This document shows, one piece after another, positions 13,196-37,095 of a stretch of DNA of 64,000 nt. Each line of letters opens with the position of its first letter. The stretch's first letter is position 1. Location of the stretch: positions 62,001-126,000 of the IMG/VR virus record IMGVR_UViG_3300036770_004723. One strand, given 5' to 3'. A model generated the notes under the pieces. It saw only the letters and a list, made by a program, of their open reading frames with translations. It did no database searches and was not told where the DNA came from. A program made the translations under genes and the position numbers.

Positions 13196-14296
13196 TTACT
13201 TAATCAAACTACCCAATTCAACACGAGAAGACTTTTTAGTCTTTTTGGCTTTAGCTTTAGTTGTTTCCTCTTGTTCTTCCATACGCGCATCTAAAACTTT
13301 TTCCAAGTGCGCTAAATATGAAGTCGCTAGTATTTCACGTATTTCATCAAGATCTTCATTTTTTATCAAATCCTTAGGGATCCGAATTTTATACTTACGT
13401 GCGAAACGTTGCAGCTGACGCAGACCCATATCAACAAGATCTTCGGCGCAGGTAATTTCTTTACCATAATCAACGCCTTCATCTAAGGATACATGACCCT
13501 CTTCGTCTTCATAAGCAGCTTTAGCTATACCTTTATCAATATCACGGGCTATGTCACTAAGGCTGTAGATCTTAGTGCCTGCATCTTCAGCACGTTTTAG
13601 TTGATCACGGTTTCGTTTTGCAACAGAGCCAATGTCATCAATAAAGCCCATCACCCCGTTAGTGTTTAGTTTAAGATCAAAATCTGATTCAAGAGGTTTA
13701 ACTTTCTTATCAAACTTTTCAGGACTAGGATCTAAATAGAGACCTTTAAATTCTAACTTACGGCGCAACACTTCAAATTGAGGCAAAGTAAAAACATTTT
13801 TTTCATTACCCATATTCTGAAAAGACATAACAATCTTTCCATCATCACTACAGACTCTAATAAGGTTACTGTCCACACTCAAAATACGAGCAGTCATGAA
13901 ATTAGATAAATACGTGCGCGAAAGTGTACCACGATATCTAACATAAACTTTCTGCAAAAAAGTATAATTGTGTTTTCTAGTAATATTTTCATTTAATAAA
14001 ACCGCAGCAAAAGTACGTAATTGCTCTAAACTGAAGCCGCGAATTACGTCAGCTAATTCGAAAAGACTGCTGCCATTTTTTTCCACACTTTCAGCAAGCG
14101 CAACACTGTTAGGTGTAAAACTAGAACAAGATACATGGCTGGCTTTTTTGCCTTGTTTGCTACAAGTAACGTTTTCCCCGTTAATTAAACGTTCTCTGGT
14201 TAACCCTATACATTCACCACAGGTTAGTTTTTCTTCGGTTAATACTCTTACCCGAATTTTTTGTCCTGTCTTCTGAATAGTTGAGTTCTTTGCCAT
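13196..14296 (-). CDS. Hypothetical protein with Cys cluster and C-terminal HeH/Rho-N-like module
   Basis: CGEC..C..C; LVDMGLRQLQRFARKYKIRIP; ends SSRVELGSLIK. Confidence 0.7.
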   Translation of the reverse strand: MAKNSTIQKTGQKIRVRVLTEEKLTCGECIGLTRERLINGENVTCSKQGKKASHVSCSSFTPNSVALAESVEKNGSSLFELADVIRGFSLEQLRTFAAVLLNENITRKHNYTFLQKVYVRYRGTLSRTYLSNFMTARILSVDSNLIRVCSDDGKIVMSFQNMGNEKNVFTLPQFEVLRRKLEFKGLYLDPSPEKFDKKVKPLESDFDLKLNTNGVMGFIDDIGSVAKRNRDQLKRAEDAGTKIYSLSDIARDIDKGIAKAAYEDEEGHVSLDEGVDYGKEITCAEDLVDMGLRQLQRFARKYKIRIPKDLIKNEDLDEIREILATSYLAHLEKVLDARMEEQEETTKAKAKKTKKSSRVELGSLIK

Positions 14297-21403: not shown

Positions 21404-21455
21404 ATGAATCCCCTTTAACAATGATAATTTAGACTTTTAATAAATAGGAGTTTAT

Positions 21456-22661
21456 ATGAACCTAATCAAGCTACATGCACAAGTATTAAAATTTCCAAAA
21501 GAGCTTAAAAAGATTCTGACTATGTTTATATCAAACAGAAACAGACGAGGTTGTAATGCTTTGCTTAATAAGCCTAATTCCAATATAGGTAAATTACTAC
21601 GTGATTCGTTTAAGTCCCCTATAAATAAGATTGCTATTTCAGATCTACATACAGCGTTAACAGGTGAAGCTTCTGCCGTATGTTTAAGAAAAGGATGTAC
21701 AAACAAAACAAATTACTGCTATGCCGACCGCAAATTTCGAGCGTGCTGTTCTAAGAAATGTGCAAACATATCAGGTTATACTCAAGCTAAACGTGAAGAA
21801 GTAATGCTTGATCGTCACGGTGTAAAAAACCCATACCAAATGCCTTCTACTAAGAAGAAAATTGAGGAAACTAATCTCAAAAAATATGGCGTAAAAAATC
21901 CTTCTTCGTCTGAAAAAGTAAAGCTTAAACGTAAGAAAACTTTTCAGGATCGTTATGGTATAAATTCACCAATGGAAAGTTCTGAATTTAAAGACAAACA
22001 AAGAGCCGTACTTTTAGAAAATCATGGTGTAGATAATCCAATGAAGTCTTCTAAAATTCGATCTGAAATGTCAGAAAGATTTAGAATGAAGCATGGTGTA
22101 ACTAATCCAATGCAAGTTCAAGAATTCGTAACTAAATCTCAGAAAAACTACGAATTGGCTTGCATTAAAAAGTATGGAGTACGTAATGCAATGCAGTCTC
22201 CAGAAATTCTTAAAATATGGTCCAGTGCGCAATCAAAAAGAACTGAAATTTCACTATGTGGTACAACACTAAATCTACAAGGCTATGAAGAACATGCGTT
22301 AAATTGTCTTTACCGATCAAAACCTTTCAAGTCAATAACTAATGATCCTACAAAGATGCCTCAGGTCAATTACACAATTAACGGTAAGTCGAGGGTGTAT
22401 CTGCCTGATGCTGCAATCAAAATGTTTGATGAATCTATAAGAGTGATCGAAGTAAAAAGCTGGTACACACTATCAAAAAAAGACAACTACTACAAATTTC
22501 GTGCAGCTACTAAATTTTATAACTCAATAGGTGTCGATTTTATTCTTGTAATCGTAGACGACAAAACAGGCGCATTAAAGATCTTATTTAATCCATATAA
22601 AGGGTTAAGATCTTTAATACGCGCAGCGAAAGTTCTTAGCTCAGGCCGTCGAACTTGGTAA
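21456..22661 (+). CDS. Free-standing putative homing endonuclease, antisense inside fractured gyrB
   Basis: GGAG SD; Cys motifs (CCSKKC), six [KR][YH]G[VI]x[NS][PA] repeats, C-terminal YLPD...VIEVK PD-(D/E)xK domain. Confidence 0.85.
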   Translation: MNLIKLHAQVLKFPKELKKILTMFISNRNRRGCNALLNKPNSNIGKLLRDSFKSPINKIAISDLHTALTGEASAVCLRKGCTNKTNYCYADRKFRACCSKKCANISGYTQAKREEVMLDRHGVKNPYQMPSTKKKIEETNLKKYGVKNPSSSEKVKLKRKKTFQDRYGINSPMESSEFKDKQRAVLLENHGVDNPMKSSKIRSEMSERFRMKHGVTNPMQVQEFVTKSQKNYELACIKKYGVRNAMQSPEILKIWSSAQSKRTEISLCGTTLNLQGYEEHALNCLYRSKPFKSITNDPTKMPQVNYTINGKSRVYLPDAAIKMFDESIRVIEVKSWYTLSKKDNYYKFRAATKFYNSIGVDFILVIVDDKTGALKILFNPYKGLRSLIRAAKVLSSGRRTW

Positions 22662-25600
22662 TGTGATCTTCTACTGTAAGATCTTTTGCTTTAGTATATT
22701 CACTTCCAGTCAACCACAGATGATCTGGTGTACACAGCCAAACACTGTTATCTTCCAAAGTAACCTCAATAAGTTCATCCACGTATTTAGTTATACGTGG
22801 ATGTTCTAGTAGTGATATCTCAAAAGCGTCTTTTTCAATCGAATAGCTAACTCCTTCACAAACAAAACCTCTTTCATACATATATACAAGTTCTTCGAAA
22901 GTAATTGTATTCCCGTTCGACAATTTTACAGGTGTACTTGCAATAAAACAACCTCCCGCAGAATCGCCCTCCACCAAGTATAATTCGCGTTCATGAGGTT
23001 TGCAGTTTGGTGCTTCATAGAGTTTGACAGGTAAACTGCCTTGACTCTTTTTGACCTCGCTCATTCCTTTCATGACTTTTGCAAGATCTTCACGCGAAGC
23101 AGCAACTTCAGATGCACGTTTAATAATTGCTTTTGCCAGACTTTTGTTTTTCTTAAAGAATTCCGTTAAAGGCTCTGTTAAAAGATCCGTAACTTCATTG
23201 TCAATTTTACTTACAAGTTTATCCTTTACCTGTCCGCTAAACTGAGCGCTGTTCATTTTCCAGTTTATTAAGGCAACGGCACCAACATACAAATCATCTG
23301 GTTTAAATGCGCCAGATTTTTTAGGCATATAATCTTTTAAGGCTTTCGACATAGCTGCACGGAAACCTGTTACGTGTGTACCATGATCAACTGTTGGGCT
23401 ACTGTTTACGTAGCTACGAAATAAATCTGTGTCGTGGTAATTGGACCACTGAATAGCTACCTTTAATCTGCCTGAATCGAATTCGAAAGGCTTACCTATA
23501 CCTTCAAGCTCACGATCTTGTAGAATGTTTCCAATTATACCTGATAAACCTTTATCATTGTAAAATTCTTTGATTTTATTTGTTTCAAGATCGTGTAAAG
23601 TCAAAAGAAGTTTAGGGTTCATGGTACTCATGAACTTTAAATAATCTTCAACTATAGTCGGCTGTAAAATAGCCTGAGTGTATGTTTTTAATTTTTTTGT
23701 TCGGTTAGCGTCAACGCTGATCACACTTTGGTCAGGAACAAAGCGAACAATAGATCCTAAACGTTTATACTTTTTCTTGATAGTAGCTAGATAACCAAAT
23801 TGTTTTTTCAGAAAAGAATCAGAAACTTTTTTAACTTCAGTTATTGCTTTACCACAACTAAAGCCTTGGTAATACCATTGATTTTCACGGCAAGTCCAAA
23901 CTTCAAATTCTTTACTTATAGCATTCAGCGCAGAAATCCCGACACCATGAGTATTACCAACAAACACACCACTAGCTAATAAGTAGGTATGATCATTTTC
24001 AACACTCAGCCCGTATACAGGAACCTTGTCAACTTTTTTGATTTCAACAGAAACAACTTTATGGTTACGTTCTTGAGCTAATGATGCAAGTTCTGAATTC
24101 GAAGAACACGAATCAAAATATTTAGCCAATTCAACACCAGTTTCCCAGTTCGGACTGCCAGCTGTACGATTGTTTTCATACCAATCTTTATCTATATGTC
24201 CTACTTCTGACAAGCAAGCATTCAATGTAATCAAAAAACGAGAATACGCAGTTTGTTTACGTCTGTCTGTGTAATCAGAAACTTTTTGTTTGGCTTCTAA
24301 TCTACGTTGTTTGGCTTCAAGCTTAATTCTTCTGTTTTCAGCCTCTACACCAGTATATAGAAACACATCTGGATTAAGTCCGTGAGCAACACAGTCAACA
24401 AAACGTCCAATCGTAATATATTTTAAAACGGAAGCAGCATTTAAAGTTTTAGCTGATTTTAAAATGGCATAAATTTTGTTGAAGTCTAAGTCCAATAATT
24501 CTTCCTGAGTTAATTTTTGATCAAAAACAAAATTCAAAGCTTTACCTACAATTCGTTTTGCAGTCATGAACTCTGAGTTATCAAAAATCATTGAATTGGC
24601 AGATAGACCAACTTCGTAATCTAACGAATCAAAAAATCTCTGGCCAATTTCTTGTTTCTTATCAAGTCGATCTTGGAAATAAGCAACAGTATCTTCTACG
24701 TACTTTCTGAAAGTAGCAGGCTTATCAAAATAATATTTTAAAGTTGACCAGCTAGGAGCGCCATGAAACCTGTTAGCTTCGTAAAGCTCTTTATTAATTC
24801 GTCCAAATTTTACGAGACAACGGCTACCAATTTTAATTGCTTTGCCTGTAACTTGCTTGAATATAAAATCTGGATCTGTATTTAGCTCTGTAAGCATTTC
24901 AGATTTTAAATGAGCAGTTTCTTTTACGAAATCCATCCAAGCAAACCATTTATCAGGATGTTCTTCATAATGTTCTTTCTGTGTAATCGCTTTTAAATTT
25001 TCATAACGATTATCAGTCTTATCTTCGTTTTCGTGGTGAACGTGAAGATTATCAATATCTTCACCGTTATACTCCATGACGAATCTGTGAACACGACCTA
25101 ATTCACGGCTAACTAAATAGCCATCTTTATCTTGTTTAAAATCCAATGATCTCAAGCTCATACCAGCTTTTAGTTTTTGAGCCTGAACTTTCTTTAAACC
25201 TGTTGTGTAGAATGGATGGTCAACTGTACATTCAATTGTTTCACCGTTATCAAGTTCAATAACTGCAAGTTGATCGACATACTTAGTTATTTGGACATTG
25301 TAACAGGCGTTGATTCCGACTTCACCTGTTTTAGGATCTAAACTAAACACATCGAAAGGTTTAGCGTCATCTTCAAAACGTGAATACAATTCTTCAAAAG
25401 TTGGAGTAGTTCCATCAAGCAACCTGACACGAGTTGATCCTACAAAACAGCCACCAGATGTTTCATAAGCACTACTGTCAAATTTGCCTCCAGCATGTAG
25501 CTCAGTCAGGATTAATGTCAATGCACTAATCTTTTTACCGTCGATCAACTTATCGCCTACAGGGATACCTTGCGCACAATCTGCAATAACGTATTCACCT

Positions 25601-25812
25601 ACTTTATTATTATAAGCAACGTAAATAGCATTGTTACGGCCAGCTTCGTATTCGTCACGGCTGTTTTCAACAGGCTCTTTGATAGCCCGAAACATCATGG
25701 CGTCACCTAATTCACCTAAATACATCGCGACATTGCCACGAACTTTATCTAGACCTAAAAGGGCTTTGATGTCATCTTCATTATATGTTTTAGTTTTTAA
25801 CTTTGCCATCAA
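22636..25812 (-). CDS. gyrB: GyrB N-terminal gene: GHKL ATPase and transducer, cis intein, C-terminal N-intein
   Basis: EPVENSRDE, GIPV, LHAGGKF, SGG|THGVG, GTHVTGF, FSGQVK, ELYLVEGDSAGG|C. Confidence 0.94.
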   Translation of the reverse strand: MMAKLKTKTYNEDDIKALLGLDKVRGNVAMYLGELGDAMMFRAIKEPVENSRDEYEAGRNNAIYVAYNNKVGEYVIADCAQGIPVGDKLIDGKKISALTLILTELHAGGKFDSSAYETSGGCFVGSTRVRLLDGTTPTFEELYSRFEDDAKPFDVFSLDPKTGEVGINACYNVQITKYVDQLAVIELDNGETIECTVDHPFYTTGLKKVQAQKLKAGMSLRSLDFKQDKDGYLVSRELGRVHRFVMEYNGEDIDNLHVHHENEDKTDNRYENLKAITQKEHYEEHPDKWFAWMDFVKETAHLKSEMLTELNTDPDFIFKQVTGKAIKIGSRCLVKFGRINKELYEANRFHGAPSWSTLKYYFDKPATFRKYVEDTVAYFQDRLDKKQEIGQRFFDSLDYEVGLSANSMIFDNSEFMTAKRIVGKALNFVFDQKLTQEELLDLDFNKIYAILKSAKTLNAASVLKYITIGRFVDCVAHGLNPDVFLYTGVEAENRRIKLEAKQRRLEAKQKVSDYTDRRKQTAYSRFLITLNACLSEVGHIDKDWYENNRTAGSPNWETGVELAKYFDSCSSNSELASLAQERNHKVVSVEIKKVDKVPVYGLSVENDHTYLLASGVFVGNTHGVGISALNAISKEFEVWTCRENQWYYQGFSCGKAITEVKKVSDSFLKKQFGYLATIKKKYKRLGSIVRFVPDQSVISVDANRTKKLKTYTQAILQPTIVEDYLKFMSTMNPKLLLTLHDLETNKIKEFYNDKGLSGIIGNILQDRELEGIGKPFEFDSGRLKVAIQWSNYHDTDLFRSYVNSSPTVDHGTHVTGFRAAMSKALKDYMPKKSGAFKPDDLYVGAVALINWKMNSAQFSGQVKDKLVSKIDNEVTDLLTEPLTEFFKKNKSLAKAIIKRASEVAASREDLAKVMKGMSEVKKSQGSLPVKLYEAPNCKPHERELYLVEGDSAGGCFIASTPVKLSNGNTITFEELVYMYERGFVCEGVSYSIEKDAFEISLLEHPRITKYVDELIEVTLEDNSVWLCTPDHLWLTGSEYTKAKDLTVEDHITKFDGLS
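22639..22950 (-). mobile_element. Split intein, N-half (IntN, 104 aa)
   Basis: DSAGG|CFIASTPV...CTPDHLWLT...AKDLTVEDHI then stop; blocks A and B only. Confidence 0.92.
23953..25449 (-). mobile_element. GyrB cis intein (499 aa, HNH) in the ATP lid
   Basis: SGG|CFVGST...CTVDHPF...HVHHENEDKTDNRYEN...VFVGN|T. Confidence 0.92.
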
Positions 25813-25814
25813 GG

Positions 25815-26174
25815 TTAACCTTCTATAAATCTTTCACTGAGAATTCTAATGCAAGTCTGTGTGACTATTTCATTTTTTTCTGGAAGAATATTTGAATTCA
25901 AATTCAAAACAAGTTCAGCATATTCTTTTAATATATCAGGATCAGTAATATCATTTATGGCTATTTCTGAAAAATTACTATCCATTGCTGTTACTTTAAA
26001 CAGCATTTTAGAATTAAGGCCATCACCATTTAAAGTAATAAGGAAAAAACAAGAATTTCTTTTTACTACACGAAAAATTTCCTTTTTTAATTCTTCGATA
26101 AGTTCTATGTGTTTACTTATAAAACTATGTGCTTCCAGTTCGGCAGCTTTGACCTTTCCTATTAACCAAGACAT
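25815..26174 (-). CDS. Hypothetical protein
   Basis: Coupled ORF. Confidence 0.6.
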   Translation of the reverse strand: MSWLIGKVKAAELEAHSFISKHIELIEELKKEIFRVVKRNSCFFLITLNGDGLNSKMLFKVTAMDSNFSEIAINDITDPDILKEYAELVLNLNSNILPEKNEIVTQTCIRILSERFIEG

Positions 26175-26584
26175 ATATTTTTGCCTATACGAGAAATAAG
26201 GTTTTTAGTTTTTTGTGTTACGTCGTTAATTATTTTTTCAGCGTTGTATCCACCGTCCTCAAGTCTTTTTACTAAAGGATTAAGAATATCTATAGCCGCT
26301 AAGAATCCGTTTTGTTTTTGTTCTAAAAGGGATAACTCAAGAGCGTAGGTAGATACAACAAATTCATGGTAGCATTTATCTTCTGGATCTAAATTAGATC
26401 CATTTATTAATCTAATAGATTTTAGATTATCTTGATTTAGACGAAAGATTGCTTTCTCTGTTTCTAGCAGATTAAGTTTATTTAAAAGTAAATGGTTTGA
26501 TAGAGTGGAGTAAATAGAGGAAATTTCCATAGAAGAGTTCAATATACAGTCTATATCATTAGAAAGCCCTAACAAATTTTCCAT
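26162..26584 (-). CDS. Hypothetical protein
   Basis: GGGAG SD. Confidence 0.65.
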   Translation of the reverse strand: MENLLGLSNDIDCILNSSMEISSIYSTLSNHLLLNKLNLLETEKAIFRLNQDNLKSIRLINGSNLDPEDKCYHEFVVSTYALELSLLEQKQNGFLAAIDILNPLVKRLEDGGYNAEKIINDVTQKTKNLISRIGKNICLG

Positions 26585-26616: not shown

Positions 26617-26654
26617 ACAAATAGCCAGTAAATTCGAATTTACTGGCTATTTGT
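26617..26654. terminator. 38-bp perfect palindrome after the H1-like gene
   Basis: ACAAATAGCCAGTAAATTC-GAATTTACTGGCTATTTGT. Confidence 0.6.
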
Positions 26655-26662: not shown

Positions 26663-27097
26663 TTAATTATCAAAAGCGAATTCGTTTGATTTCTTTTTTG
26701 ATTTTTTATCGGCCTTTGGATCGGCTTTTTTGTCGGCTTTTTTGTCGGCTTTTTTGTCAGCTTTAGCTGGAGCTTTCTTGTCAGCTACTTTTTTATCAGC
26801 AGCTTTCTTGTCAGCTTTAGCTGGAGCTTTTTTGTCAGCTTTAGCTGGAGCTTTTTTGTCAGCTTTAGCTGGAGCTTTTTTGTCGGCTACTTTTTTATCA
26901 GCAGCTTTTTTATCGCCTTTTGCTGGAGCAGCAACAACGCCAGCTAAAGAATCGGCTTGCAGTTTTGTAGCAGCAGCCAAAGCGTCAGCTTGATCAGCTT
27001 GTTTAGCCAATGCTTCGGCTTGTTTACGTAAAGCAGCTGCTTGTTTAGAAGAAGCGTTCGCAGATTTATTTAAGGCAGAAATGGCTTGTTTACTCAT
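26663..27097 (-). CDS. Histone H1-like Lys/Ala-rich protein
   Basis: N-terminal Ala-rich coiled coil, tandem KKAPAKAD repeats. Confidence 0.8.
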   Translation of the reverse strand: MSKQAISALNKSANASSKQAAALRKQAEALAKQADQADALAAATKLQADSLAGVVAAPAKGDKKAADKKVADKKAPAKADKKAPAKADKKAPAKADKKAADKKVADKKAPAKADKKADKKADKKADPKADKKSKKKSNEFAFDN

Positions 27098-27183
27098 GAT
27101 GTTTTTCTCAATTTTAATTTTAAATAAAAGGTAGGCTAACTTTAGCCTACCACAAAAAGATTAATTACGGATTGAATGGTAGA

Positions 27184-27930
27184 TTATTCTTCTTCTGACC
27201 ATTCTTCCTCTTCTTCATCTTCATCTTCATCTTCGTCAGATGAATAATTTTCTTCTAACCACCCACGAAGTTTATCTTCTGTCTTCAAGTATTTCGCCGG
27301 TACTTCAAGATCATTGTCTTTTACAAACTTTTTCAGTTCTTTTAAATCCATTTCGTCGAAGTCAGGAGCGTCATCTTCCTCTTCCTCTTCTTCGTCTTCA
27401 TCTTCGTCAGATGAATAATTTTCTTGCAAGAATTCACGAAGATCATCTTCGCTTTTTACTTTCTTAGGAACTTCAATATCATTATCTTTCGCAAACTTTT
27501 TCAGTTCCTTGAGGTTCATTTCGTCGAAGTCAGGAGCGTCATCTTCCTCTTCCTCTTCTTCGTCTTCGTCTTCATCCGAAGCAAATTCTTCTTGTAAGAA
27601 TTCACGTAAGGCGTCTTCGGTTTTTGCTTTCTTTGGAATTTCGATTTCGTTATCTTTACAGAATTTCTTCATTTCCTTGAGGTTCATTTCGTCGAAGTCA
27701 GGAACTTCCTCTTCCTCTTCTTCGTCTTCATCTGAATCTTCCTCTTCTTCCTCTTCCTCTTCTTCCTCTTCGTCTTTCTTTTTCTTTGACTTAGAAGGTG
27801 TACCTGAAGATCCAATTACAGCAGAAACTTCAGCAGAAGTAACAGCACCTTCTTCAATTGCTACGCCTAAAAGTTCCAATAAAGCCGATGCAACTGTTTT
27901 GCCTGAAGATGCTTTTGATTTTTTAGCCAT
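27184..27930 (-). CDS. Hyper-acidic protein with three HeH/Rho-N/SAP-like repeats
   Basis: 3x PDFDEM[ND]LKE[ML]KKFxKDNxxE[IV]P...EDxLR separated by poly-E/D. Confidence 0.85.
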   Translation of the reverse strand: MAKKSKASSGKTVASALLELLGVAIEEGAVTSAEVSAVIGSSGTPSKSKKKKDEEEEEEEEEEEDSDEDEEEEEEVPDFDEMNLKEMKKFCKDNEIEIPKKAKTEDALREFLQEEFASDEDEDEEEEEEDDAPDFDEMNLKELKKFAKDNDIEVPKKVKSEDDLREFLQENYSSDEDEDEEEEEEDDAPDFDEMDLKELKKFVKDNDLEVPAKYLKTEDKLRGWLEENYSSDEDEDEDEEEEEWSEEE

Positions 27931-28037
27931 TTTTAGTTTTCCCTTATTACTTTGAATTTGAGAGATTAATCGAGAGTTTTTAAAGAGTAGGTTTTGTTCC
28001 CTACTCTATTAGATTTACAGTTTTGAAATTGTAGAAC

Positions 28038-28535
28038 TTAATCTGCTAAAGACGTTTCTAAAACGAAACCTTGCTTGTTATTGTTGTTGAATACTGTGGT
28101 ATCGCCAGTAGCTGAATTTGTAATTACAACTGAATCGCCTTTGATTGTAATACGTGCGCGTTTACATTCAAACATAACATCACGTTGAATTACAGTCATT
28201 TTCACATTTTCACCTACAGCGCCAGTAAAGAACATAACATCATCTGCTTTAATTAAGCTGACGGTGTTTTTTGATGATCTAGGCTTTAAGTGGGCAACTT
28301 GGAAAATATTCCCATCAGCAGACAATAAACGACCTAATAATTCAACAGGTGCGTGTGCTACAATACGAACAGCAAATTCCGTTTTAGGATCTGCTTTTTT
28401 GGTTGTGATCTTAGAAAGCTTACCTTCGTACTTTTCAAGCATACCGCCTGAAACGTTTTTCTTTGCAACTACTTTTTTACCGGCCGCTTTAACAGCTACA
28501 TTAGGTTTAACACTTGGGCGTTTATTATTAGACAT
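28038..28535 (-). CDS. Hypothetical beta-rich protein with basic N-tail
   Basis: ORF with its own promoter motif and terminator. Confidence 0.75.
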   Translation of the reverse strand: MSNNKRPSVKPNVAVKAAGKKVVAKKNVSGGMLEKYEGKLSKITTKKADPKTEFAVRIVAHAPVELLGRLLSADGNIFQVAHLKPRSSKNTVSLIKADDVMFFTGAVGENVKMTVIQRDVMFECKRARITIKGDSVVITNSATGDTTVFNNNNKQGFVLETSLAD

Positions 28536-28657
28536 ACACTTACCTTCTTTGTTTGTTTATTAACAGTGTTATTAGATTATCAAGTTCAGGCCGGAAAATA
28601 AAAAATCGACCTGAACTTTAATCTTAACCATTATTTACAGTTTTGTACCACGCACGA

Positions 28658-30439
28658 TTAAGCTGAGATAAGATCAACTACAACGGCGTTGTCCCATAAA
28701 GTCAGACTATCGACGCCTTGGTGTGACTGGGCGAAGTCTACTAACAGAGGCTGATATGGTTGCTCTTCAGTCTCAGCTTCAGAATTTTCCAGATAACTTT
28801 CGTCAGTTTCGTCAGTTTCTTCAAAGTCTTCTTCAGATTCTTCTTCAGATTCTTGCTCTGCGATTGAAATCAATTCGGTTAGTTTATAGTTCGGCTGTGA
28901 CGAAACATAGTCACGAATAGCGTCATTATTCAAAATGCTCGACACGGAAGCCGCAAAAACAAATCCATGTTCAACATTTGAGTCTGTATCTTCTAAAACA
29001 GAATCAGTAATCTTTGACAAGATTTTAGTCAAAGACACTAACATCTGTTCAAACTTTTGTTCAGACCGGACAGAATTCAAAAAAGGCACATTTAAATGTA
29101 CTACTACGTCAAAGAACGATGTAGTATCAATTTTGTCTGAGTTTAAGCAAACTTTAATACCTAAGAAATTGTTGATACTGAAATCTTCAGGTAGATTAAG
29201 TCCGCAATTTTCAGACAACATTGTTACACTGTCCAGTGCTTCTGTTAAGTTATTTAACAGCGTGTGCATGGTGATCTGAATATAATTCAGAGGACCTACA
29301 TAAGTACGGTTTGCTGCATTAAATTCTGCAAGTAAACGCACTACGCCTTCAATGGCGGTAGTGGCAAACCCGACATTATGGTCGTTATTTCTGGCAGCGG
29401 AAAGAGATCTTAATGGATGCTGTAAATCGTAAACTTCACCATCAATACCAGAAACGTTCTCTAATTCTGAAATTTCTACAGAAGTCAGATCTTGATTACT
29501 TTCAGCATAAAGCTGAATGATTAAACGTGCTTGAGTTTGGATCTCAATATGAGGCACGTTAGTATCACGCAAGTAGTTTACTGATTCTACACGATTCATT
29601 ACATAATCTTGAGTCGTTTCGTTTTCTTCGTTTTCTTCGAATTCGGTTTCTTCGAATTCGGTTTCTTCGAATTCGTTTTCTTCGTTTTCTTCGAATTCGT
29701 TTTCTTCGTTTTCTTCGAATTCGTTTTCTTCGAATTCGTTTTCTTCTTCGGTTTCTTGATCAGGATCAAAATCAGAATTTAGACTATCAATATCCAGATC
29801 CAGTTCTTCATCTGTAGAGTCTGAAGATTCTGCTTGAATACCTTCAAATTCTGATTCGTCATCAACGGCGTTTAAGCCGGTTTGAATCTCATAGTAGTAT
29901 TCTAACAGCATACCGCGTAAATCTGTTGTTGAAAAATCACGCCAACCTTCATACGTATTTTGAGCCGGTAAATATTTTTCAACATGATCCACACAAGCTT
30001 GACGATCCATTTTGTCAACTGTAGAAGTTACAAGATCCATAGGATCTTCCACACCAGCGGATTCCAAATCATCTAAAAGAATACCGTTTAGCGGATCTTC
30101 TTCTGTAGTCCCATCTACAGAACCAATGTCATCAAGTGAATCTTCCTCAGATTCACTTGCATTAGATTCAGACGCAGATTCAGACGCAGATTCACTTACA
30201 TTGGTTTCAGATTCATCAAATGAAAAATCACGATCAGCTTTTAAAATCAGCTGCAATTCATCCAGAAGAATCTGACGAAGACCGCGCGTATTATTAGCGT
30301 ATTCTCTTTGAATTTCGTTATACTTATTCGAGCCTAAGCTAGAGAGTAAGTCACCTAAACCACGTACAGATAAGTTGTCCAGATTTTCTTGCACAGAATA
30401 ATCTGTTTTAGAATCATACGGAAGTTTGATTGTTTGCAT
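28658..30439 (-). CDS. Large acidic protein with FEENE repeats
   Basis: 593 aa, strongly D/E-rich. Confidence 0.8.
   Translation of the reverse strand: MQTIKLPYDSKTDYSVQENLDNLSVRGLGDLLSSLGSNKYNEIQREYANNTRGLRQILLDELQLILKADRDFSFDESETNVSESASESASESNASESEEDSLDDIGSVDGTTEEDPLNGILLDDLESAGVEDPMDLVTSTVDKMDRQACVDHVEKYLPAQNTYEGWRDFSTTDLRGMLLEYYYEIQTGLNAVDDESEFEGIQAESSDSTDEELDLDIDSLNSDFDPDQETEEENEFEENEFEENEENEFEENEENEFEETEFEETEFEENEENETTQDYVMNRVESVNYLRDTNVPHIEIQTQARLIIQLYAESNQDLTSVEISELENVSGIDGEVYDLQHPLRSLSAARNNDHNVGFATTAIEGVVRLLAEFNAANRTYVGPLNYIQITMHTLLNNLTEALDSVTMLSENCGLNLPEDFSINNFLGIKVCLNSDKIDTTSFFDVVVHLNVPFLNSVRSEQKFEQMLVSLTKILSKITDSVLEDTDSNVEHGFVFAASVSSILNNDAIRDYVSSQPNYKLTELISIAEQESEEESEEDFEETDETDESYLENSEAETEEQPYQPLLVDFAQSHQGVDSLTLWDNAVVVDLISA
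29613..29757. repeat. Coding tandem repeat (9/15-bp units encoding EEN/FEENE/FEETE)
   Basis: Repeated ttcgttttcttcgaa. Confidence 0.85.
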
Positions 30440-30476
30440 TTTAAATCCTTAGCGCTTTAGCGCAATTTGCCATTTA

Positions 30477-31574
30477 TTAAAAACCTAAACTTTTGAGTTT
30501 CTTCATTACTCGCGTTTTGTCTACATTAGGGTAAATTATTTCAGTACCATCTTTTGCAGCACAAAACATTTGATCAATTTTCACAAAAAACTTAGTTGAA
30601 GGATCGTTTGCTTTAGCTTCAGCTCTAGCATTACGACGCAACTCTCTATGAGCTAAACGCTTACGCTCAAAGGCTTCAACTAATTGACGCGCAGATTCTG
30701 CTTTTTCCAAAGCTTTTGCATTAGGTTTAGCTAGCTTACTAAATTCTGCCAAATAAAGCTGAGCAAGACCATTCTTTTCACGATATTTTTTCATCCAATG
30801 TAAATAAGGTGAATTTATATCAGTCTTTTCTCTAGCAATTTCATCCAATCGATCAAGGTCTAGATTAATCCATTGATCAATTAGATTTTTTTGATCACCT
30901 ACAGCATCCTTTAGTTTCAACTTACCTTTTAAAACATAAAGTTTATCGCTAGAACCAAAACAGTGCTGAGGTAAAACTTTAGGGAATAGACTATTTCCTT
31001 GAAACGTAAAATCCACGCACTTGGAAAATGTACGCTCTTTTCCCTTTTTTAAATAAGCCAAAAAAACTGAAACTAATTGAGTATCGTGCTGGCAGTTTTT
31101 ATAGACAGCATAAATATCATAAGATTTTTCGTTAATGTCTTTGGCTATGTTGACCATAAATCTAAGATAGTCAGTGCTAGGTATATACATACCGCTGACC
31201 TCACAAGATTTGTTTATATGTTCTTTCAAAGCACTAAGTAAAGTTTTTTTAGTTATTCGTTGATCTCTAAACTCTAAAGCGTCATAGCCTGCAATGTTAA
31301 ACCACAACATTGCATTAAGAGAATCTTTCGGCAAGCCAAGACCTACATAATAAAGTTTAGAAATATTTTCACAGGCAACAGAACTCCCACGCTTAGCCTG
31401 ATCGTAAAGACTACGCAAAAGATTTTTGGAAATTCTGTGCATAAAGTTGTTGCCTGTTTTTTGGTACTTATCTCCAGCAACAGGAACAGATTTAACTATC
31501 AAGGATTGTGTAGAAATAGTCGAAGGAGCTGTTTCAAACAAAATTCCTGAATACACTAAGTTCGAATAGTGCAT
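30477..31574 (-). CDS. Protein with a Sel1-like repeat
   Basis: AKRGSSVACENISKLYYVGLGLPKDSLNAMLWFNIA. Confidence 0.65.
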   Translation of the reverse strand: MHYSNLVYSGILFETAPSTISTQSLIVKSVPVAGDKYQKTGNNFMHRISKNLLRSLYDQAKRGSSVACENISKLYYVGLGLPKDSLNAMLWFNIAGYDALEFRDQRITKKTLLSALKEHINKSCEVSGMYIPSTDYLRFMVNIAKDINEKSYDIYAVYKNCQHDTQLVSVFLAYLKKGKERTFSKCVDFTFQGNSLFPKVLPQHCFGSSDKLYVLKGKLKLKDAVGDQKNLIDQWINLDLDRLDEIAREKTDINSPYLHWMKKYREKNGLAQLYLAEFSKLAKPNAKALEKAESARQLVEAFERKRLAHRELRRNARAEAKANDPSTKFFVKIDQMFCAAKDGTEIIYPNVDKTRVMKKLKSLGF

Positions 31575-31620
31575 AAGTACCTCTAAAGCTAGGGCAGAAT
31601 TTCTGCCCTAGCTTGATTTT

Positions 31621-33153
31621 TTAAGCGATAATACCGGCGTCTTTTAAACGATTGACTGCCCAAGCTTTCAATTTTTTGAAAGTAACTGGTTCACGGGTTA
31701 AAGTCTTAACTGTGTAGTTTGACTTGATTTTGATATCATTATCAGAACACAGTTGCAGAATCTGTGAAGGATCCATAGAAAGAACTGCGTCTTCAGTTAA
31801 AAGATCAGACTCTTCTTCCTCTTCTTCCTCTTCAGTGTAAGAAAATTCATCAGAGTCTACAGCAGACTCTTCTTCCTCTTCTTCCTCTTCCTCTTCTTCC
31901 TCTAAGGAATCTGATTCGTCAGGAAAGAAAGCATCCAGAATAAATTCAATTAACTGGTCGGAATCTGCTTCATCGACAAAACTTTCGTTCTGTTCCAGGT
32001 CTTCAGATTCTTCTTCACCTAAATTAATATAGGTGTAAATAAAGTTGCGTAGCTGTTTCTCTGTCTGTTCCTCTAAAACAGCCTGAGCTTCGTCACGATC
32101 TTCACAACCTGACAGAATGTGATCTTCATCTTCATCCATATCAGCTTCTTCGCGGTTATCATCCGCTTCTTCTTCAATGAAGTCTTCATCTTCTTCAATG
32201 AAGTCTTCATCTTCTTCGATGATATCTTCAGATTCAGTTAATGCCTGAAGATCCAACTTTTCAAAGTCTTTAGATCCAAGATCTAAAGTTTCACCGTCTT
32301 CAGTTTCAACAATTAAACGTGCAACAGGCTCACGTTGCAGGCCAGCAAAATACATTGCATTACCGTCTTCGTCAACCAAACGGGATCCGACAACAAAACT
32401 GTTCTGTTCTTCTTCTGTTTCCAAAGCTAAAGCCGCGAAAACTTTTTGGGCAATTCCTGCATTTTTTGCCACTTGTGTTTCCCACAAACCTGCAACAACT
32501 CGACTTAAGGTTGTTTCTGAGAAATTGAATTCGATATCATCTTCTTCAATTTCTTCAGGTAAATCAAAGCCGATGTCACAGATAATAACAACTCGATCCG
32601 TTAAAGCACCATCCAATTCAGGATCTTCAACTTGACCAGAACAAACAACACCAGAAACATTGGTAAAGCGTGATTCTAAATATTCACGCACTAAAGATTC
32701 AATACCTGGACGCACAACAGCAGCAACTTGCCGAACGTCAGTTACCAGTTCTTTTTCAATTTCAGGCTCTGATTTTTTCTCGGCTACTTTTGTCTTTGCC
32801 TTTGCCTTAGGTTGATCATCTTCAAAACTTTCAGCTACTTTAGCTTTTTGTTTTGTTTTTGTTTTTGTCTCAGGTTTCTTTTCGACCTCAGGAATGATCA
32901 GATAACCTTCACGCACTTTAATTTTGTCGGTGATATCAGCATAAGCTTCAGGATCTACTTCAAAAAAGTTTTGTCCTTTACGTGCCAAACAAGTTGCAGG
33001 CAACGCTTTGCGCCGATCTCGCATTTTGTACGATCTTGCACTAGCTTCAACAATCTTATCACGAGAACCGTCAAGCATCGTTACCATTTTACCCACTAAA
33101 GATTCGTTCGGTACTACATTAATTTTCTTAGCCATCTTATTCACCTTTTGCAA
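31621..33153 (-). CDS. Large protein with basic N-part, acidic C-part and HeH-like modules
   Basis: Probable start MAKKIN (33135); C-terminal VLSMDPSQILQLCSDNDIKI. Confidence 0.8.
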   Translation of the reverse strand: MQKVNKMAKKINVVPNESLVGKMVTMLDGSRDKIVEASARSYKMRDRRKALPATCLARKGQNFFEVDPEAYADITDKIKVREGYLIIPEVEKKPETKTKTKQKAKVAESFEDDQPKAKAKTKVAEKKSEPEIEKELVTDVRQVAAVVRPGIESLVREYLESRFTNVSGVVCSGQVEDPELDGALTDRVVIICDIGFDLPEEIEEDDIEFNFSETTLSRVVAGLWETQVAKNAGIAQKVFAALALETEEEQNSFVVGSRLVDEDGNAMYFAGLQREPVARLIVETEDGETLDLGSKDFEKLDLQALTESEDIIEEDEDFIEEDEDFIEEEADDNREEADMDEDEDHILSGCEDRDEAQAVLEEQTEKQLRNFIYTYINLGEEESEDLEQNESFVDEADSDQLIEFILDAFFPDESDSLEEEEEEEEEEEESAVDSDEFSYTEEEEEEEESDLLTEDAVLSMDPSQILQLCSDNDIKIKSNYTVKTLTREPVTFKKLKAWAVNRLKDAGIIA

Positions 33154-33224
33154 AAGATATTTTTGAATTTGATAATGAATTTACAGTATTGGCGCTGTTA
33201 AGTGCCAGCGCCAAGCACAAACTT

Positions 33225-33815
33225 TTAAAAGGAAATGAATTCGCTGGCGTCAACTGACACTTCACGGCCTTTTGAAGTAACACACTTAAACTTGCATACA
33301 CCAGCACGAATACTTACACCATAAATGGCCATATCGCCAAACTTTTCATTGGTAATTGTTTTGCCGAACATGGCTAAGGCTACACCATGTTCTTTAGCCT
33401 TAGCCAAAGAAACTTTAAAGTCGTCTTTGTATTCAGCGGCGTAATCGCCTTCACGCCAAACTTTTCCTAACGCACCAACAGTACGAACAAACTGTTCGGT
33501 TGTTTGTTCGTTTGGTGGTGTTTTAGTATTTACAGTTTTCGGTTTTGCAGATCCTGAATTTTGTTGAATCTGCGCTTTAGTAACCAGTAACAAACTTTCA
33601 ATTGATTTTAAAATGCGCTCAATTGATTTTGCATCAAGAGCATCCACTTTTAAACCGGCACCTGCTAAAACTTTTTTATCTTTAGCCGGTAATTCTTCAA
33701 AAGAAAAATTCTCTTCTTTTTGTTTGACAATACGTGGCTTGACCTGACCTTTTTGGTCACGATTTACAACTTTTTGATCACGTACTGGGAAACGATTGCT
33801 TTTGTTGATAGCCAT
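33225..33815 (-). CDS. Hypothetical early protein
   Basis: GAGGA SD, downstream of boxed promoter. Confidence 0.75.
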   Translation of the reverse strand: MAINKSNRFPVRDQKVVNRDQKGQVKPRIVKQKEENFSFEELPAKDKKVLAGAGLKVDALDAKSIERILKSIESLLLVTKAQIQQNSGSAKPKTVNTKTPPNEQTTEQFVRTVGALGKVWREGDYAAEYKDDFKVSLAKAKEHGVALAMFGKTITNEKFGDMAIYGVSIRAGVCKFKCVTSKGREVSVDASEFISF

Positions 33816-36831: not shown

Positions 36832-37095
36832 TCAATGATTTAAACTTAGTTCAATGGTAAATAAATAATCTTCGATCATGAATTCGTAGGATGTTTCCGA
36901 AATTTTCGTTACTTCGACTTCATTACAAAAATCTTTTAATTCGGCTTCATCAAGTTCTTCACAAAAGCCTTCTAGGCTAAGGTGAACGTAGGCATTTTGA
37001 ATGGCCTCTAAAATAAGATGTTCAATATTATTGTCAGTTGAGATAAATGAGCCTACTATCTCAACCTCGTCACTTTCAGTATTTAAATATTCCAT
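36832..37095 (-). CDS. Small acidic protein (DNA-mimic candidate)
   Basis: 87 aa, very E/D-rich. Confidence 0.6.
   Translation of the reverse strand: MEYLNTESDEVEIVGSFISTDNNIEHLILEAIQNAYVHLSLEGFCEELDEAELKDFCNEVEVTKISETSYEFMIEDYLFTIELSLNH

What the first reader, a model, noticed from the sequence alone, without database searches (positions are those of the whole stretch)
26663..33153. H1-like basic protein clustered with hyper-acidic HeH-repeat proteins: phage chromatin or condensate kit?
Seen: a KKAPAKAD-repeat protein sits next to a protein with three FDEMNLKELKKFAKDNDIEVP..EDDLR modules in poly-E/D, followed by two further large acidic proteins with similar modules (LDNLSVRGLGDLL, VDKMDRQACVDHV, LEEQTEKQLRNFI, VLSMDPSQILQLC). 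A basic version occurs in the 13196 ORF (LVDMGLRQLQRFARKYKI). Three genes in the cluster have their own CTGTAAAT motif and several have terminators. Established: such modules resemble SAP/Rho-N/HeH folds, and polyacidic proteins chaperone basic DNA-condensing proteins. Inference: a system that organises phage DNA or builds a membrane-less replication compartment.
Basis: partly seen in the sequence, partly recalled or inferred. Interest (0 to 1): 0.66.

Follow-up and report, generated by a model that had tools for sequence, protein, structure and literature searches.

The report
Conserved jumbo-phage H1-like/polyacidic HeH gene cassette
A jumbo phage carries, among its DNA-replication genes, a conserved but uncharacterised set of genes for one lysine-rich histone-H1-like protein and several extremely acidic proteins with small DNA-binding-type (HeH/SAP) modules; it is most likely a kit for handling DNA inside the infected cell, and it is not head scaffolding.

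Summary
On the minus strand of 26663-33815 lie a 144-aa K/A/P-repeat protein (net +21), a 248-aa protein with 41% D+E and three tandem HeH modules (Pfam Ish1 and DUF6887 above cut-off), a 165-aa beta protein, a 593-aa and a 510-aa acidic protein, a 365-aa protein and a 196-aa protein.

The window is part of a 286.6-kb virus from a subsurface metagenome. It is a distant member of the PaBG/Lu11/NCTB/Y3/JA29 ("Lupandier") jumbo-phage group. The whole cassette is syntenic across that group and is annotated everywhere as hypothetical. The trio of beta protein, polyacidic protein and H1-like protein is present in all seven lineages examined.

The H1-like and HeH proteins are the most constrained proteins of the cassette (82% and 69% identity, against 22-51% for the others). 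Three cassette genes carry CTGTAAAT, the genome's top upstream motif, which also precedes the genes for DNA polymerase, clamp loader, SSB and sigma factor. The head module lies more than 100 kb away.

An AF2 model supports SAP/LEM/Rho-N-like modules in the 593-aa protein, but only weakly.

Function is inferred, not shown. My best reading is an intracellular DNA-organising polycation/polyanion set. I have no evidence for a condensate. The one complex prediction gave no verdict.

The parts
26663..27097 (-). H1-like protein, 144 aa. It has an N-terminal ~55-aa A/Q/K-rich helix (coiled-coil type), then K/A/P/D repeats (KKAPAKAD), then a C-terminal acidic-aromatic tail, EFAFDN.
   Evidence: phrog_38087, E 2.6e-6. 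No Pfam or NCBIfam H1, Hc1 or HC2 hit. Orthologues with the same three-part build occur in L012, Y3, JA29, Yen9-02, NCTB and PaBG. 82% identical to the L012 orthologue.
26621..26650 (-). Hairpin of about 13 bp just downstream of the H1-like gene (terminator-like, weak U-tract).
   Evidence: Sequence read.
27130..27151 (-). Hairpin of 9 bp followed by TTTTATTT, lying between the HeH gene and the H1-like gene (intrinsic-terminator-like).
27184..27930 (-). Polyacidic HeH protein, 248 aa. It has a conserved N-terminal ~45-aa helical domain, a short K-run, poly-E, then three HeH modules (residues 77-118, 133-174, 189-231) separated by poly-D/E. One Trp sits in the acidic C-end.
   Evidence: Orthologues carry 0 (PaBG), 2 (Y3, JA29, Yen) or 4 (NCTB) modules. 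69% identical to the L012 orthologue.
27984..28020 (-). CTGTAAAT motif (28013-28020) followed by an 8-bp hairpin (27984-28007), upstream of the HeH gene.
28038..28535 (-). 165-aa protein: a basic N-terminal tail plus a ~130-aa beta-rich domain.
   Evidence: phrog_22271. Alignment A1 includes PaBG gp126, NCTB 077, Y3 gp322, JA29 gp308 and Yen 223. tblastn finds 60 phage records. No PDB or Atlas fold assignment.
28575..28640 (-). CTGTAAAT motif (28633-28640) followed by a hairpin, upstream of the 165-aa gene.
28658..30439 (-). 593-aa acidic protein. It has two helical SAP/LEM-like modules (residues ~15-67 and ~130-194), acidic low-complexity runs including NEFEE repeats, an alpha/beta C-terminal domain (~295-515), an acidic tail and a final beta-strand.
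   Evidence: AF2 model m8fdcf628f4dd. VIA search. BFVD matches to JA29 gp306, NCTB 076, PaBG gp127 and one further unnamed viral protein, E 4e-10 to 2e-6. Only 8 relatives among 1.84 billion representatives.
30477..31574 (-). 365-aa basic protein with one Sel1-like repeat signature (residues ~70-105) and a conserved C-terminal ...LGF.
   Evidence: Weak profile match to the E. coli locus C5321 protein 4bwr_A, E 0.097. That 4bwr is an SLR protein rests on my own knowledge. Collinear weak hhalign to Yen gp220. No Pfam hit.
31586..31614 (-). 13-bp hairpin between the 510 and 365 genes, with no U-tract in the sense direction.
31621..33153 (-). 510-aa acidic protein. It has a conserved N-terminal small beta domain (residues ~13-60), a K-rich linker, a central domain, poly-D/E, and two HeH-like modules (~355-410 and ~462-505). 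The true start is probably the ATG at 33135.
   Evidence: phrog_33433. hhalign gives 97% probability to Yen gp216. HeH HMM hits at the C-ends of the Yen, Y3 and JA29 orthologues. The AF2 model of residues 1-312 is poor, pLDDT 42.
33179..33186 (-). CTGTAAAT motif upstream of the 510 gene.
33225..33815 (-). 196-aa protein (basic N-half, beta-rich C-half); the first gene of the syntenic block in the close relatives.
25815..26584 (-). Two small genes (140 aa and 119 aa) between the H1-like gene and topoisomerase II; they are conserved in position in all relatives.
13316..13444 (-). Basic HeH module (residues 285-327) at the C-end of the 366-aa ORF 13196-14296. Residues 16-259 of that ORF match phrog_17701 'DNA topoisomerase'.

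Best explanation
The region is a conserved cassette of the PaBG/Lu11/NCTB/Y3/JA29-type jumbo phages. It is expressed with the replication genes and encodes a matched set of polyelectrolyte, DNA-associated proteins that act inside the infected cell.

The proposed mechanism is as follows.
- The H1-like protein oligomerises through its N-terminal helix. It coats, bridges or condenses DNA through its K/A/P repeats.
- The polyacidic proteins (248, 593 and 510 aa) are held on DNA by their small HeH/SAP-type modules, whose loops are lysine-rich. They carry long poly-D/E chains. These chains buffer or chaperone the polycation and other basic DNA binders, and keep the DNA-protein phase dynamic.
- Short acidic-aromatic tails (F-x-F) link members of the set to each other or to replisome proteins.

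Shown: composition, domain content, synteny, strong purifying selection, a shared upstream motif, and distance from the head module.

Inferred: DNA binding, mutual binding, timing of expression, and the effect on DNA.
For: (1) Architecture. The cassette pairs a polycation (net +21) with three polyanions (net -70, -114 and -81) within 6.5 kb. Three of the genome's four large acidic proteins cluster here, P = 0.003.

(2) HeH modules. Pfam Ish1 and DUF6887 are above cut-off. The modules match phrog_3281 (annotated endonuclease VII) and HeH-bearing phage families. The 593 modules match Rho N-terminal domain 1a62 (Z 5.5), emerin LEM 7ndy_G (Z 4.5, rmsd 1.9), the T4 endonuclease VII C-terminus 1e7d (Z 5.1), and SAP domains 2do1 and 1zrj (Z 4.0-4.1). 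The same module type is fused to a topoisomerase-family protein in this genome.

(3) Conservation. The full gene order is kept in L003-L005, L012 and L013, and more remotely in Yersinia fHe-Yen9-02, Erwinia Y3, Dickeya JA29, NCTB and PaBG. Orthology of the 593 protein is confirmed by structure.

(4) Constraint. The H1-like and HeH proteins are 82% and 69% identical to their L012 orthologues, against 22-51% for the other seven genes. Third-codon-position identity is only ~0.5.

(5) Context and regulation. The cassette sits in the block that holds topoisomerase II, DnaB, UvdE, RecA-like, SSB and sigma genes. CTGTAAAT precedes the 510, 165 and HeH genes. It also precedes the genes for DNA polymerase, clamp loader, SSB and sigma factor within 50 nt, and the clamp gene at about 150 nt.

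(6) Not a head module. MCP, the gp81-like protein and the head ATPase lie at 193-198 kb and lack the motif. PaBG gp124-131 are absent from the PaBG virion protein table.

(7) Established knowledge (from memory, not tested here). K/A/P-rich H1 tails and bacterial H1-like proteins condense DNA. Polyacidic proteins such as prothymosin-alpha and nucleoplasmin chaperone linker and core histones.
Against: - There is no experimental or expression datum for any member. The only sequencing run that holds the DNA is a DNA metagenome.
- The H1-like protein is 'H1-like' by composition only. It has no winged-helix, Hc1 or HC2 family match.
- Each repeat also carries an Asp, so the charge density is lower than in true H1 tails.
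- The HeH modules are net acidic, apart from their loops.
- PaBG's polyacidic orthologue has no HeH module at all, so DNA tethering cannot be its core function.
- The structural matches of the 593 modules have Z below 6. For small helical units that may reflect only a common arrangement.
- CTGTAAAT also precedes the portal gene, so it is not strictly a replication-class signal.
- The H1-like gene itself has no CTGTAAAT and sits behind a terminator-like hairpin.
Confidence: 0.35

Rival explanations
1. Host take-over kit. The H1-like protein compacts and silences the host nucleoid. The polyacidic proteins act as DNA mimics or decoys that soak up host nucleoid-associated proteins or DNA-targeting defences (in the manner of Ocr or Arn).
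For: The proteins have extreme negative charge density in long runs. The genes sit in a non-structural block that carries an early/middle-type motif. The PaBG orthologue is almost pure poly-D/E (67%) with no HeH module. Expression of chlamydial Hc1 in E. coli shuts down macromolecular synthesis, as cited in PMC12619734.
Against: Known DNA mimics are folded proteins with patterned charge, not poly-E/D runs interrupted by DNA-binding-type modules (own knowledge). The HeH modules point to binding DNA rather than imitating it. Anti-host genes usually turn over fast, whereas these are the best-conserved genes of the cassette and are present in phages of very different hosts.
Confidence: 0.2
2. Replisome or recombination accessory proteins. 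The acidic-aromatic C-terminal tails work like SSB or T7 gp2.5 tails. They dock the H1-like, 510 and 593 proteins onto polymerase, clamp, topoisomerase II or SSB, so the cassette is a set of replisome-tethered DNA-handling factors rather than a bulk DNA-organising set.
For: The F-x-F acidic tail is conserved at the very C-end of the H1-like protein in all seven lineages, and it recurs in 510- and 593-family proteins. The cassette is adjacent to topoisomerase II in most lineages, and to sigma, SSB and UvsX in PaBG. It shares its motif with the replisome genes. The phage SSB itself has an unusual poly-D/K-rich tail.
Against: No partner has been identified. The only test run (the tail against the 365-aa and 165-aa proteins) gave no verdict. 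The resemblance of the tail to SSB or gp2.5 tails is recalled from memory and was not tested.
Confidence: 0.15
3. Virion-internal (packaged or ejected) proteins or head scaffold. The polycation neutralises packaged DNA, and the acidic proteins act as scaffold or counter-ion peptides.
For: Scaffolds and internal peptides of large phages are often very acidic, and internal proteins are often basic (own knowledge). The terminase and portal genes lie about 17-23 kb away in the same strand block, and the portal gene also carries CTGTAAAT. The authors of PMC12619734 suggest that H1-like proteins of other jumbo phages may compact DNA for packaging.
Against: The cassette lies more than 100 kb from the MCP, gp81-like and head ATPase genes. 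Those genes lack CTGTAAAT. None of PaBG gp124-131 is among the 14 virion bands, although that survey covers abundant proteins only.
Confidence: 0.1
4. No joint function. The genes are unrelated hypothetical genes that happen to be low-complexity, and their juxtaposition is inherited synteny without functional coupling.
For: All functional links are inferential. Synteny among relatives can be purely historical. Charged low-complexity tails occur elsewhere in this genome (SSB, head ATPase).
Against: The trio order is kept even where the surroundings differ, as in PaBG. The number of HeH modules varies, but the polycation/polyanion pairing never breaks. There is unusually strong constraint on exactly the two low-complexity proteins. 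HeH modules are shared between the 248 and 510 families.
Confidence: 0.1

Closest known systems
Orthologous cassette in cultured 'Lupandier'-group jumbo phages: PaBG gp124-gp131, Erwinia Y3 gp315-gp324, Dickeya JA29 gp301-gp310, Yersinia fHe-Yen9-02 genes 216-226, phage NCTB 073-079
   Same: The gene order and protein builds are the same: a 510-like protein with the same N-terminal beta domain, a Sel1-like protein, a large acidic protein with the same C-terminal domain, a beta protein, a polyacidic protein with the same N-domain, and an H1-like protein with coiled coil, K/A/P repeats and an F-x-F tail.
   Different: Sequence identity is about 20-30% or undetectable by BLAST. The enteric phages have extra genes inside the cassette: a basic paralogue of the 510 N-domain, two small genes and a coiled-coil protein. 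The number of HeH modules differs (0 to 4). The basic tail of the beta protein sits at the opposite end. All are annotated as hypothetical, and one (NCTB 079) is misnamed a mechanosensitive channel.
Eukaryotic linker histone H1 C-terminal tail with its polyacidic chaperones (prothymosin-alpha, nucleoplasmin-type); own knowledge
   Same: A K/A/P-rich disordered polycation is encoded next to disordered poly-D/E proteins. The logic is charge-matched chaperoning of a DNA condenser.
   Different: There is no winged-helix globular domain. The repeats contain Asp. An N-terminal coiled coil and an acidic-aromatic tail are present instead. The acidic partners carry HeH modules. There is no evidence of common descent.
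Bacterial H1-like K/A/P-repeat proteins (Chlamydia Hc1/Hc2, Pseudomonas AlgP, PhaF C-terminal domain); own knowledge, and PMC12619734 for Hc1
   Same: They are small, lysine/alanine/proline-repeat DNA-condensing proteins of prokaryotes. PhaF also combines an N-terminal helical domain with an H1-like tail.
   Different: There is no match to the Hc1 or HC2 Pfam families at E up to 5. There is no adjacent polyacidic partner in those systems.
H1-like (Hc1, PF07432) genes reported in metagenomic 'moraphages' (PMC12619734)
   Same: It is a jumbo-phage-encoded H1-like protein of unknown function, for which the authors suggest genome compaction.
   Different: It belongs to a different phage lineage (PolB and T4-like structural genes, against the Pol III-type phrog_17 polymerase here) and to a different protein family. 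No acidic HeH partner or cassette is described there.
SAP / LEM / HeH / Rho-N helix-extended-helix superfamily, including the C-terminal domain of T4 endonuclease VII
   Same: These are ~40-aa two-helix modules with a basic connecting loop. Pfam Ish1 is above cut-off, and there are weak SAP_new25 and Rho_N hits. The modules hit phrog_3281 at E 3.6e-18. The 593 modules give structural matches.
   Different: Here the modules are embedded as beads in poly-D/E strings and occur in up to four copies per protein. DNA binding is untested.
Chimallin-based phage nucleus of Chimalliviridae
   Same: If the condensate reading were right, both would be phage-made compartments or organisers for replicating DNA in jumbo phages.
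   Different: That is a protein shell, not a polyelectrolyte set. This genome has a sigma factor and no detectable RNA polymerase beta-type subunit. I did not search for chimallin itself.

Membership tests
SAP/LEM/HeH (helix-extended-helix) domain superfamily: 248-aa protein | Sequence match to a curated HeH-type family above its threshold. | tested here: met
   Pfam Ish1 scores 27.6 bits against a cut-off of 26.6. DUF6887 scores 28.6 against 24.2. SAP_new25 and Rho_N fall below their cut-offs. The three copies lie at residues 77-118, 133-174 and 189-231.
SAP/LEM/HeH domain superfamily: modules of the 593-aa and 510-aa proteins | Two helices joined by an extended loop, superposable on solved SAP, LEM or Rho-N domains, or a significant sequence match. 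| tested here: inconclusive
   Sequence tests were not significant. AF2 modules with pLDDT ~80-87 match 1a62 (Z 5.5), 7ndy_G (Z 4.5, rmsd 1.9, 42 of 42 residues), 1e7d (Z 5.1), and 2do1 and 1zrj (Z ~4). All Z values are below 8. The C-terminal module of 510 is supported only through its orthologues. The 510 model covered only residues 1-312, which excludes its modules, and it was poor.
SAP/LEM/HeH domain superfamily | Binding to double-stranded DNA (or to BAF-type partners). | not testable with these tools
   Only lysine-rich loops are seen in the sequences.
Linker histone H1/H5 | Winged-helix globular domain (Pfam Linker_histone). | tested here: not met
   No Pfam family was found at E up to 5 for the window protein, and none of that family for six orthologues.
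Bacterial histone-H1-like proteins Hc1 / HC2 | Match to the Pfam Hc1 or HC2 families. | tested here: not met
   No such hit in Pfam or NCBIfam. The resemblance is compositional: 27% K, 31% A and an 8-aa repeat.
Phage head scaffolding / internal head proteins | The gene lies in the head morphogenesis module next to the MCP or prohead protease and is co-regulated with it. | tested here: not met
   The MCP lies at C1:196596-197684 with its gp81-like and ATPase neighbours, more than 100 kb from the cassette. These genes have different upstream sequences.
Phage head scaffolding / internal head proteins | Presence in proheads or virions. | not testable with these tools
   Indirect evidence only: PaBG gp124-131 are not among the 14 Coomassie-visible virion bands.
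Sel1-like repeat (SLR) proteins: 365-aa protein | Several tandem ~36-aa SLR units detectable by profile. | tested here: not met
   No Pfam Sel1 hit at E up to 0.1. One SLR-like signature was seen by eye at residues ~70-105. The match to 4bwr_A has E 0.097.
Chimalliviridae-type nucleus-forming phages | Chimallin shell protein plus phage multisubunit RNA polymerases. | tested here: inconclusive
   No RNA_pol_Rpb2_6 match in the 286.6-kb genome, and a sigma-70-type factor is present. I did not search for chimallin, and divergent phage RNA polymerases may escape Pfam.

The most novel reading that the evidence does not exclude
The cassette builds a charge-driven, membrane-less DNA compartment. The H1-like polycation and the HeH-tethered polyanions, together with the oddly charged SSB tail, would co-condense with replicating phage DNA into a coacervate-like 'phage nucleoid'. 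This would concentrate the replisome and topoisomerase II and exclude host nucleases. It would be a protein-shell-free counterpart of the chimallin nucleus, shared by the whole PaBG/Y3/JA29/NCTB group.
Probability: 0.12. Interest if true: 0.9.

Novelty: new variant of a known kind. Interest (0 to 1): 0.6.

Why it matters
Histone-like and nucleoid-associated proteins are known in bacteria and in a few phages. I found no description of a conserved phage cassette that pairs an H1-like polycation with several HeH-bearing polyanions, in seven full-text searches.

The cassette is present in cultured phages with tractable hosts: PaBG on P. aeruginosa PAO1, and the Erwinia, Dickeya and Yersinia phages. 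The question of how non-nucleus-forming jumbo phages organise and protect 250-300 kb of replicating DNA therefore becomes directly testable.

The strong constraint on two almost entirely disordered proteins is itself unusual. It offers a prokaryotic-virus model for polyelectrolyte chaperone/condenser pairs otherwise known from eukaryotic chromatin.

Tried and rejected
- Megablast of the region against the phage collection found no match. tblastn of the 593-aa and 165-aa proteins found nothing.
- The search for related loci with single proteins found nothing, and the 8-sequence alignment was too diverse to search with. The 3-sequence alignment found two IMG/VR relatives and, in the metagenome collection, only the same contig again.
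- Word-based protein searches were swamped by acidic words and gave 1-3 relatives.
- An HMM of the three window repeats, and a broader HeH HMM, did not detect the 593 and 510 modules of the window. hhalign E-values were 0.004-0.16 and not significant.
- The N-domain of 510, the 165-aa protein and the C-half of the 196-aa protein show no mutual homology.
- ESM Atlas look-ups for the 165-aa protein and the 593 C-domain gave no usable hit. The Atlas shape search of the 593 model gave TM below 0.25.
- Foldseek against the PDB gave nothing below E 0.34 for the 593 model. Its C-terminal domain has only weak POTRA-like rows, Z ~4.2-4.4. I did not fold the domain alone, so I make no claim that the fold is new.
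- AF2 of 510 residues 1-312, with 5 sequences, gave pLDDT 42 and was not searched.
- Complex prediction (365-aa protein, 165-aa protein and H1 tail residues 95-144) returned 'no answer', score 0.00, with controls not run. This is evidence neither for nor against binding.
- PDB profile searches for the 165 and 365 families and for the HeH protein gave nothing significant.
- Sequencing runs: only DNA runs of one subsurface-metagenome study were found and no RNA, so I did not use read laying.
- Sigma-70-type promoter hits in the region are not above the shuffles (22 against 23.2).
- I considered and rejected a link to the 'moraphages'. They have a different polymerase type and a different H1-like family.

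Full report
**What is there.**
The window is bases 62001-126000 of a 286,584-bp virus record. CheckV rates it 100% complete, and its GC content is about 35%. The only sequencing run that holds it comes from a subsurface metagenome.

On the minus strand between 26663 and 33815 lie seven consecutive genes:
- a 196-aa protein;
- a 510-aa protein with 27% D+E;
- a 365-aa basic protein;
- a 593-aa protein with 24% D+E;
- a 165-aa protein with a basic tail and a beta-rich body;
- a 248-aa protein with 41.5% D+E;
- a 144-aa protein with 27% K and 31% A.

Net charges are +21 for the 144-aa protein, and -70, -114 and -81 for the three acidic ones. Only four proteins in the genome have at least 200 aa and at least 24% D+E. 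Three of them lie within these seven genes (permutation P = 0.003). The fourth is a head-module ATPase with an acidic N-half.

The 144-aa gene contains a 24-nt repeat (KKAPAKAD) in 5.6 copies. The 248-aa gene contains a 168-nt repeat in 3.2 copies at 82% match.

**The modules.**
The three repeats of the 248-aa protein match Pfam Ish1 and DUF6887 above their curated cut-offs. They match SAP_new25 and Rho_N below cut-off. They also hit phrog_3281 (annotated endonuclease VII, E 3.6e-18) and several HeH-bearing phage families.

An HMM of these repeats finds one further significant copy in the genome. It lies at residues 285-327 of the 366-aa ORF 13196-14296. The N-terminal 260 residues of that ORF belong to phrog_17701, 'DNA topoisomerase'.

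The modules proposed for the 593-aa and 510-aa proteins are not significant by sequence in the window itself.

For the 593-aa protein I built a 10-sequence alignment from the few relatives that exist: eight hits in a profile search of 1.84 billion representatives. I then folded it. Residues 10-67 and 130-194 form confident helical units (pLDDT about 80-87), separated by disordered acidic runs. Residues 295-515 form an alpha/beta domain.

An exhaustive structural comparison places these units as follows:
- The first unit matches the Rho N-terminal domain (1a62, Z 5.5), the LEM domain of emerin (7ndy_G, Z 4.5, rmsd 1.9 over 42 of 42 residues) and YqbF.
- The second unit matches the C-terminal domain of T4 endonuclease VII (1e7d, Z 5.1) and two SAP domains (2do1 and 1zrj, Z about 4).

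All these hits belong to the helix-extended-helix superfold. But Z values below 8 for small helical units can be chance arrangements. I count this as supportive, not as proof.

For the 510-aa protein, the evidence for the C-terminal module comes from its orthologues. An HeH HMM trained only on the polyacidic proteins hits the C-ends of the Yersinia, Erwinia and Dickeya 510-family proteins at E 5e-12, 5.5e-10 and 2e-4.

**Relatives and conservation.**
The topoisomerase genes first pointed to phage NCTB and to the Dickeya and Erwinia jumbo phages. The N-domain of the 510-aa protein pointed to Yersinia phage fHe-Yen9-02 and Erwinia pEa_SNUABM_5.

Reading those records showed that the whole cassette is syntenic. 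The common order is: 510-like, Sel1-like, large acidic protein, beta protein, polyacidic protein, H1-like protein, two small genes, then topoisomerase II, DnaB, terminase and portal.

The same trio is present in NCTB (genes 077-079) and in PaBG (gp126, gp125, gp124). It is also present in two IMG/VR genomes (L012 and L013) that carry the full cassette. Three Logan contigs carry the cassette genes from the 510-like protein onward, up to the start of the polyacidic gene where each contig ends.

These phages form the 'Lupandier' group described for PaBG (PMC7412058).

Orthology rests on several results:
- hhalign gives 97% probability for the 510 N-domain, plus weaker collinear matches for the 365 and 593 families.
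- The 165 family aligns across eight phages.
- The 593 model has significant structural matches in BFVD to JA29 gp306, NCTB 076, PaBG gp127 and one further unnamed viral protein, E 4e-10 to 2e-6.

Every one of these genes is annotated as a hypothetical protein. NCTB's H1-like gene is mislabelled as a mechanosensitive channel.

**What is invariant and what varies.**
The H1-like protein always has three parts: an N-terminal helix of about 55 aa, K/A/P repeats, and a terminal acidic-aromatic motif. That motif reads EFAFDN, DFDFE, DFDFDME, FEFELDD, EFEFDV, FDFDN or FEDFDDLD in the seven lineages.

The polyacidic protein always has the same N-terminal ~45-aa domain, a poly-D/E stretch, and one aromatic residue near its end. 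It carries 0 HeH modules in PaBG, 2 in the enteric phages, 3 here and 4 in NCTB.

Similar F-x-F motifs in an acidic context recur in some 510- and 593-family proteins.

Between the window phage and L012, the H1-like and polyacidic proteins are 82% and 69% identical. The other seven genes of the block are 22-51% identical. Third-codon-position identity is only about 0.5. So these two largely disordered proteins are under the strongest purifying selection in the cassette.

**Context and regulation.**
The cassette lies within a long minus-strand block of DNA-metabolism genes:
- two intein-laden topoisomerase II subunits;
- DnaB;
- UvdE;
- a NADAR protein;
- a RecA/UvsX-like protein;
- SSB;
- a sigma-70-type factor;
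- a PD-(D/E)XK nuclease.

Terminase and portal lie about 17-23 kb further along the same strand.

CTGTAAAT (extended form AAACTGTAAATA) is the most enriched 8-mer in the 120 nt upstream of genes: 24 regions against 3.9 expected. It usually sits 24-46 nt before the start codon.

It precedes the 510, 165 and HeH genes. It also precedes the genes for DNA polymerase, clamp loader, SSB, sigma factor and UvdE, and the clamp gene at about 150 nt. It precedes the portal gene as well.

The head module lies at 193-200 kb and lacks the motif. That module holds the acidic ATPase, a gp81-like virion protein, the MCP and the sheath. It instead shows AT-rich TAATTTA-type sequences, a set of genes disjoint from the CTGTAAAT set.

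I read CTGTAAAT as a promoter element of a non-late class. This is an inference from position and gene content only.

The H1-like gene has no such motif. It follows a canonical hairpin plus T-tract 33 nt before its start codon, so it may depend on read-through.

**What it most likely does.**
Several lines point to proteins that act on DNA inside the infected cell:
- The proteins have DNA-binding-type modules.
- The module is fused to a topoisomerase-family protein elsewhere in the genome.
- The genes sit among replication and recombination genes.
- They share an upstream motif with the replisome genes.
- They lie far from the head module.
- None of PaBG gp124-131 is among PaBG's abundant virion proteins.

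The invariant pairing of one polycation with a polyanion suggests a charge-matched condenser-and-buffer pair. So does the strong constraint on exactly these two proteins. The closest analogy is H1 tails with prothymosin-alpha or nucleoplasmin-type chaperones; I cite this from general knowledge and did not test it.

My confidence in this general reading is 0.35. The more specific condensate or compartment idea gets 0.12.

The rivals are:
- host-nucleoid shut-off with DNA-mimic decoys (0.2);
- replisome-tethered accessory factors docking through SSB-like tails (0.15);
- packaged internal or scaffold proteins (0.1);
- no joint function (0.1).

**Membership.**
The 248-aa protein is a member of the HeH/SAP/LEM superfamily by sequence.

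The 144-aa protein is not a member of the linker-histone, Hc1 or HC2 families. It is H1-like in composition only.

H1-like (Hc1) genes have been noted in another jumbo-phage lineage, without functional data (PMC12619734). That lineage and that protein family are different from these.

**Limits.**
There are no expression or localisation data. Two of the globular domains could not be modelled or assigned: the 510 N-terminal and central domains and the 165-aa protein. The 593 C-domain has no PDB match so far, but I did not search it as a single domain. The one complex prediction returned no verdict.

Noticed in passing
window 20663-25812 (both strands): The GyrB-like topoisomerase II subunit appears to be a 'fractured' gene. 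ORF 22636-25812(-) ends in an intein N-fragment right after the EGDSAGG Toprim motif. ORF 20663-21421(-) begins with an intein C-terminal splicing block, followed by Toprim and GyrB_C. A + strand gene, 21456-22661 (DUF7487 plus TnsA-like endonuclease), sits between the two. This looks like a split intein with a free-standing endonuclease gene. The relatives L012 and L013 have an uninterrupted 660-aa gene.
   Followed up: partly
window 16133-19780, 6557-9424, 22636-25812: The genome is rich in inteins. The GyrA/ParC-like subunit has two (HNH_3 and LAGLIDADG_3 types). The large terminase has one. The GyrB-like ORF has a further complete one.
   Followed up: partly
window 52455-53519 (-): The SSB (phrog_15004) ends in alternating poly-D runs and K-rich PLKKK-type repeats, instead of the usual short acidic tail. 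It is another replisome protein with polyelectrolyte low-complexity sequence.
   Followed up: no
whole genome; in the window at 1653, 5749, 16208, 28013, 28633, 33179, 40965, 48424, 50229, 53557, 54611, 58547 and 60954: AAACTGTAAATA-type motif: 50 copies genome-wide, 22 of them within 100 nt upstream of genes, and a gene set disjoint from an AT-rich TAATTTA-type set found before the sheath and head ATPase genes. These may be two promoter classes. In front of the HeH and 165-aa genes, the motif is followed within 5-25 nt by an 8-bp hairpin.
   Followed up: partly
window 13196-14296 (-): This 366-aa protein is a phrog_17701 'DNA topoisomerase'-family domain with a C-terminal HeH module. The Yersinia phage gene annotated 'DNA topoisomerase' (gene 235) is only about 288 aa, so it may lack this extension. 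I did not compare them directly.
   Followed up: partly
G000:C1:193555-195843 (outside the window): A 762-aa protein with 29% D+E: an acidic N-half fused to an ATPase (phrog_20988). It lies directly upstream of a gp81-like virion protein and the MCP, and it is the orthologue of PaBG gp82. It is the only other large hyper-acidic protein of the genome.
   Followed up: partly
L012:851-1627 (IMG/VR relative): An extra 258-aa gene upstream of the cassette starts with what looks like another HeH-type module (seen by eye, not tested). The module family seems to spread within these genomes.
   Followed up: no
window 36832-37095 (-): An 87-aa acidic ORF (25% D+E) with a marginal HeH-HMM hit (E 0.06-0.1) lies just upstream of the 668-aa gene.
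   Followed up: no
L011:10508-11092 (phage NCTB gene 079): The H1-like orthologue is annotated 'Large-conductance mechanosensitive channel' in the public record. This is almost certainly a low-complexity artefact.
   Followed up: no
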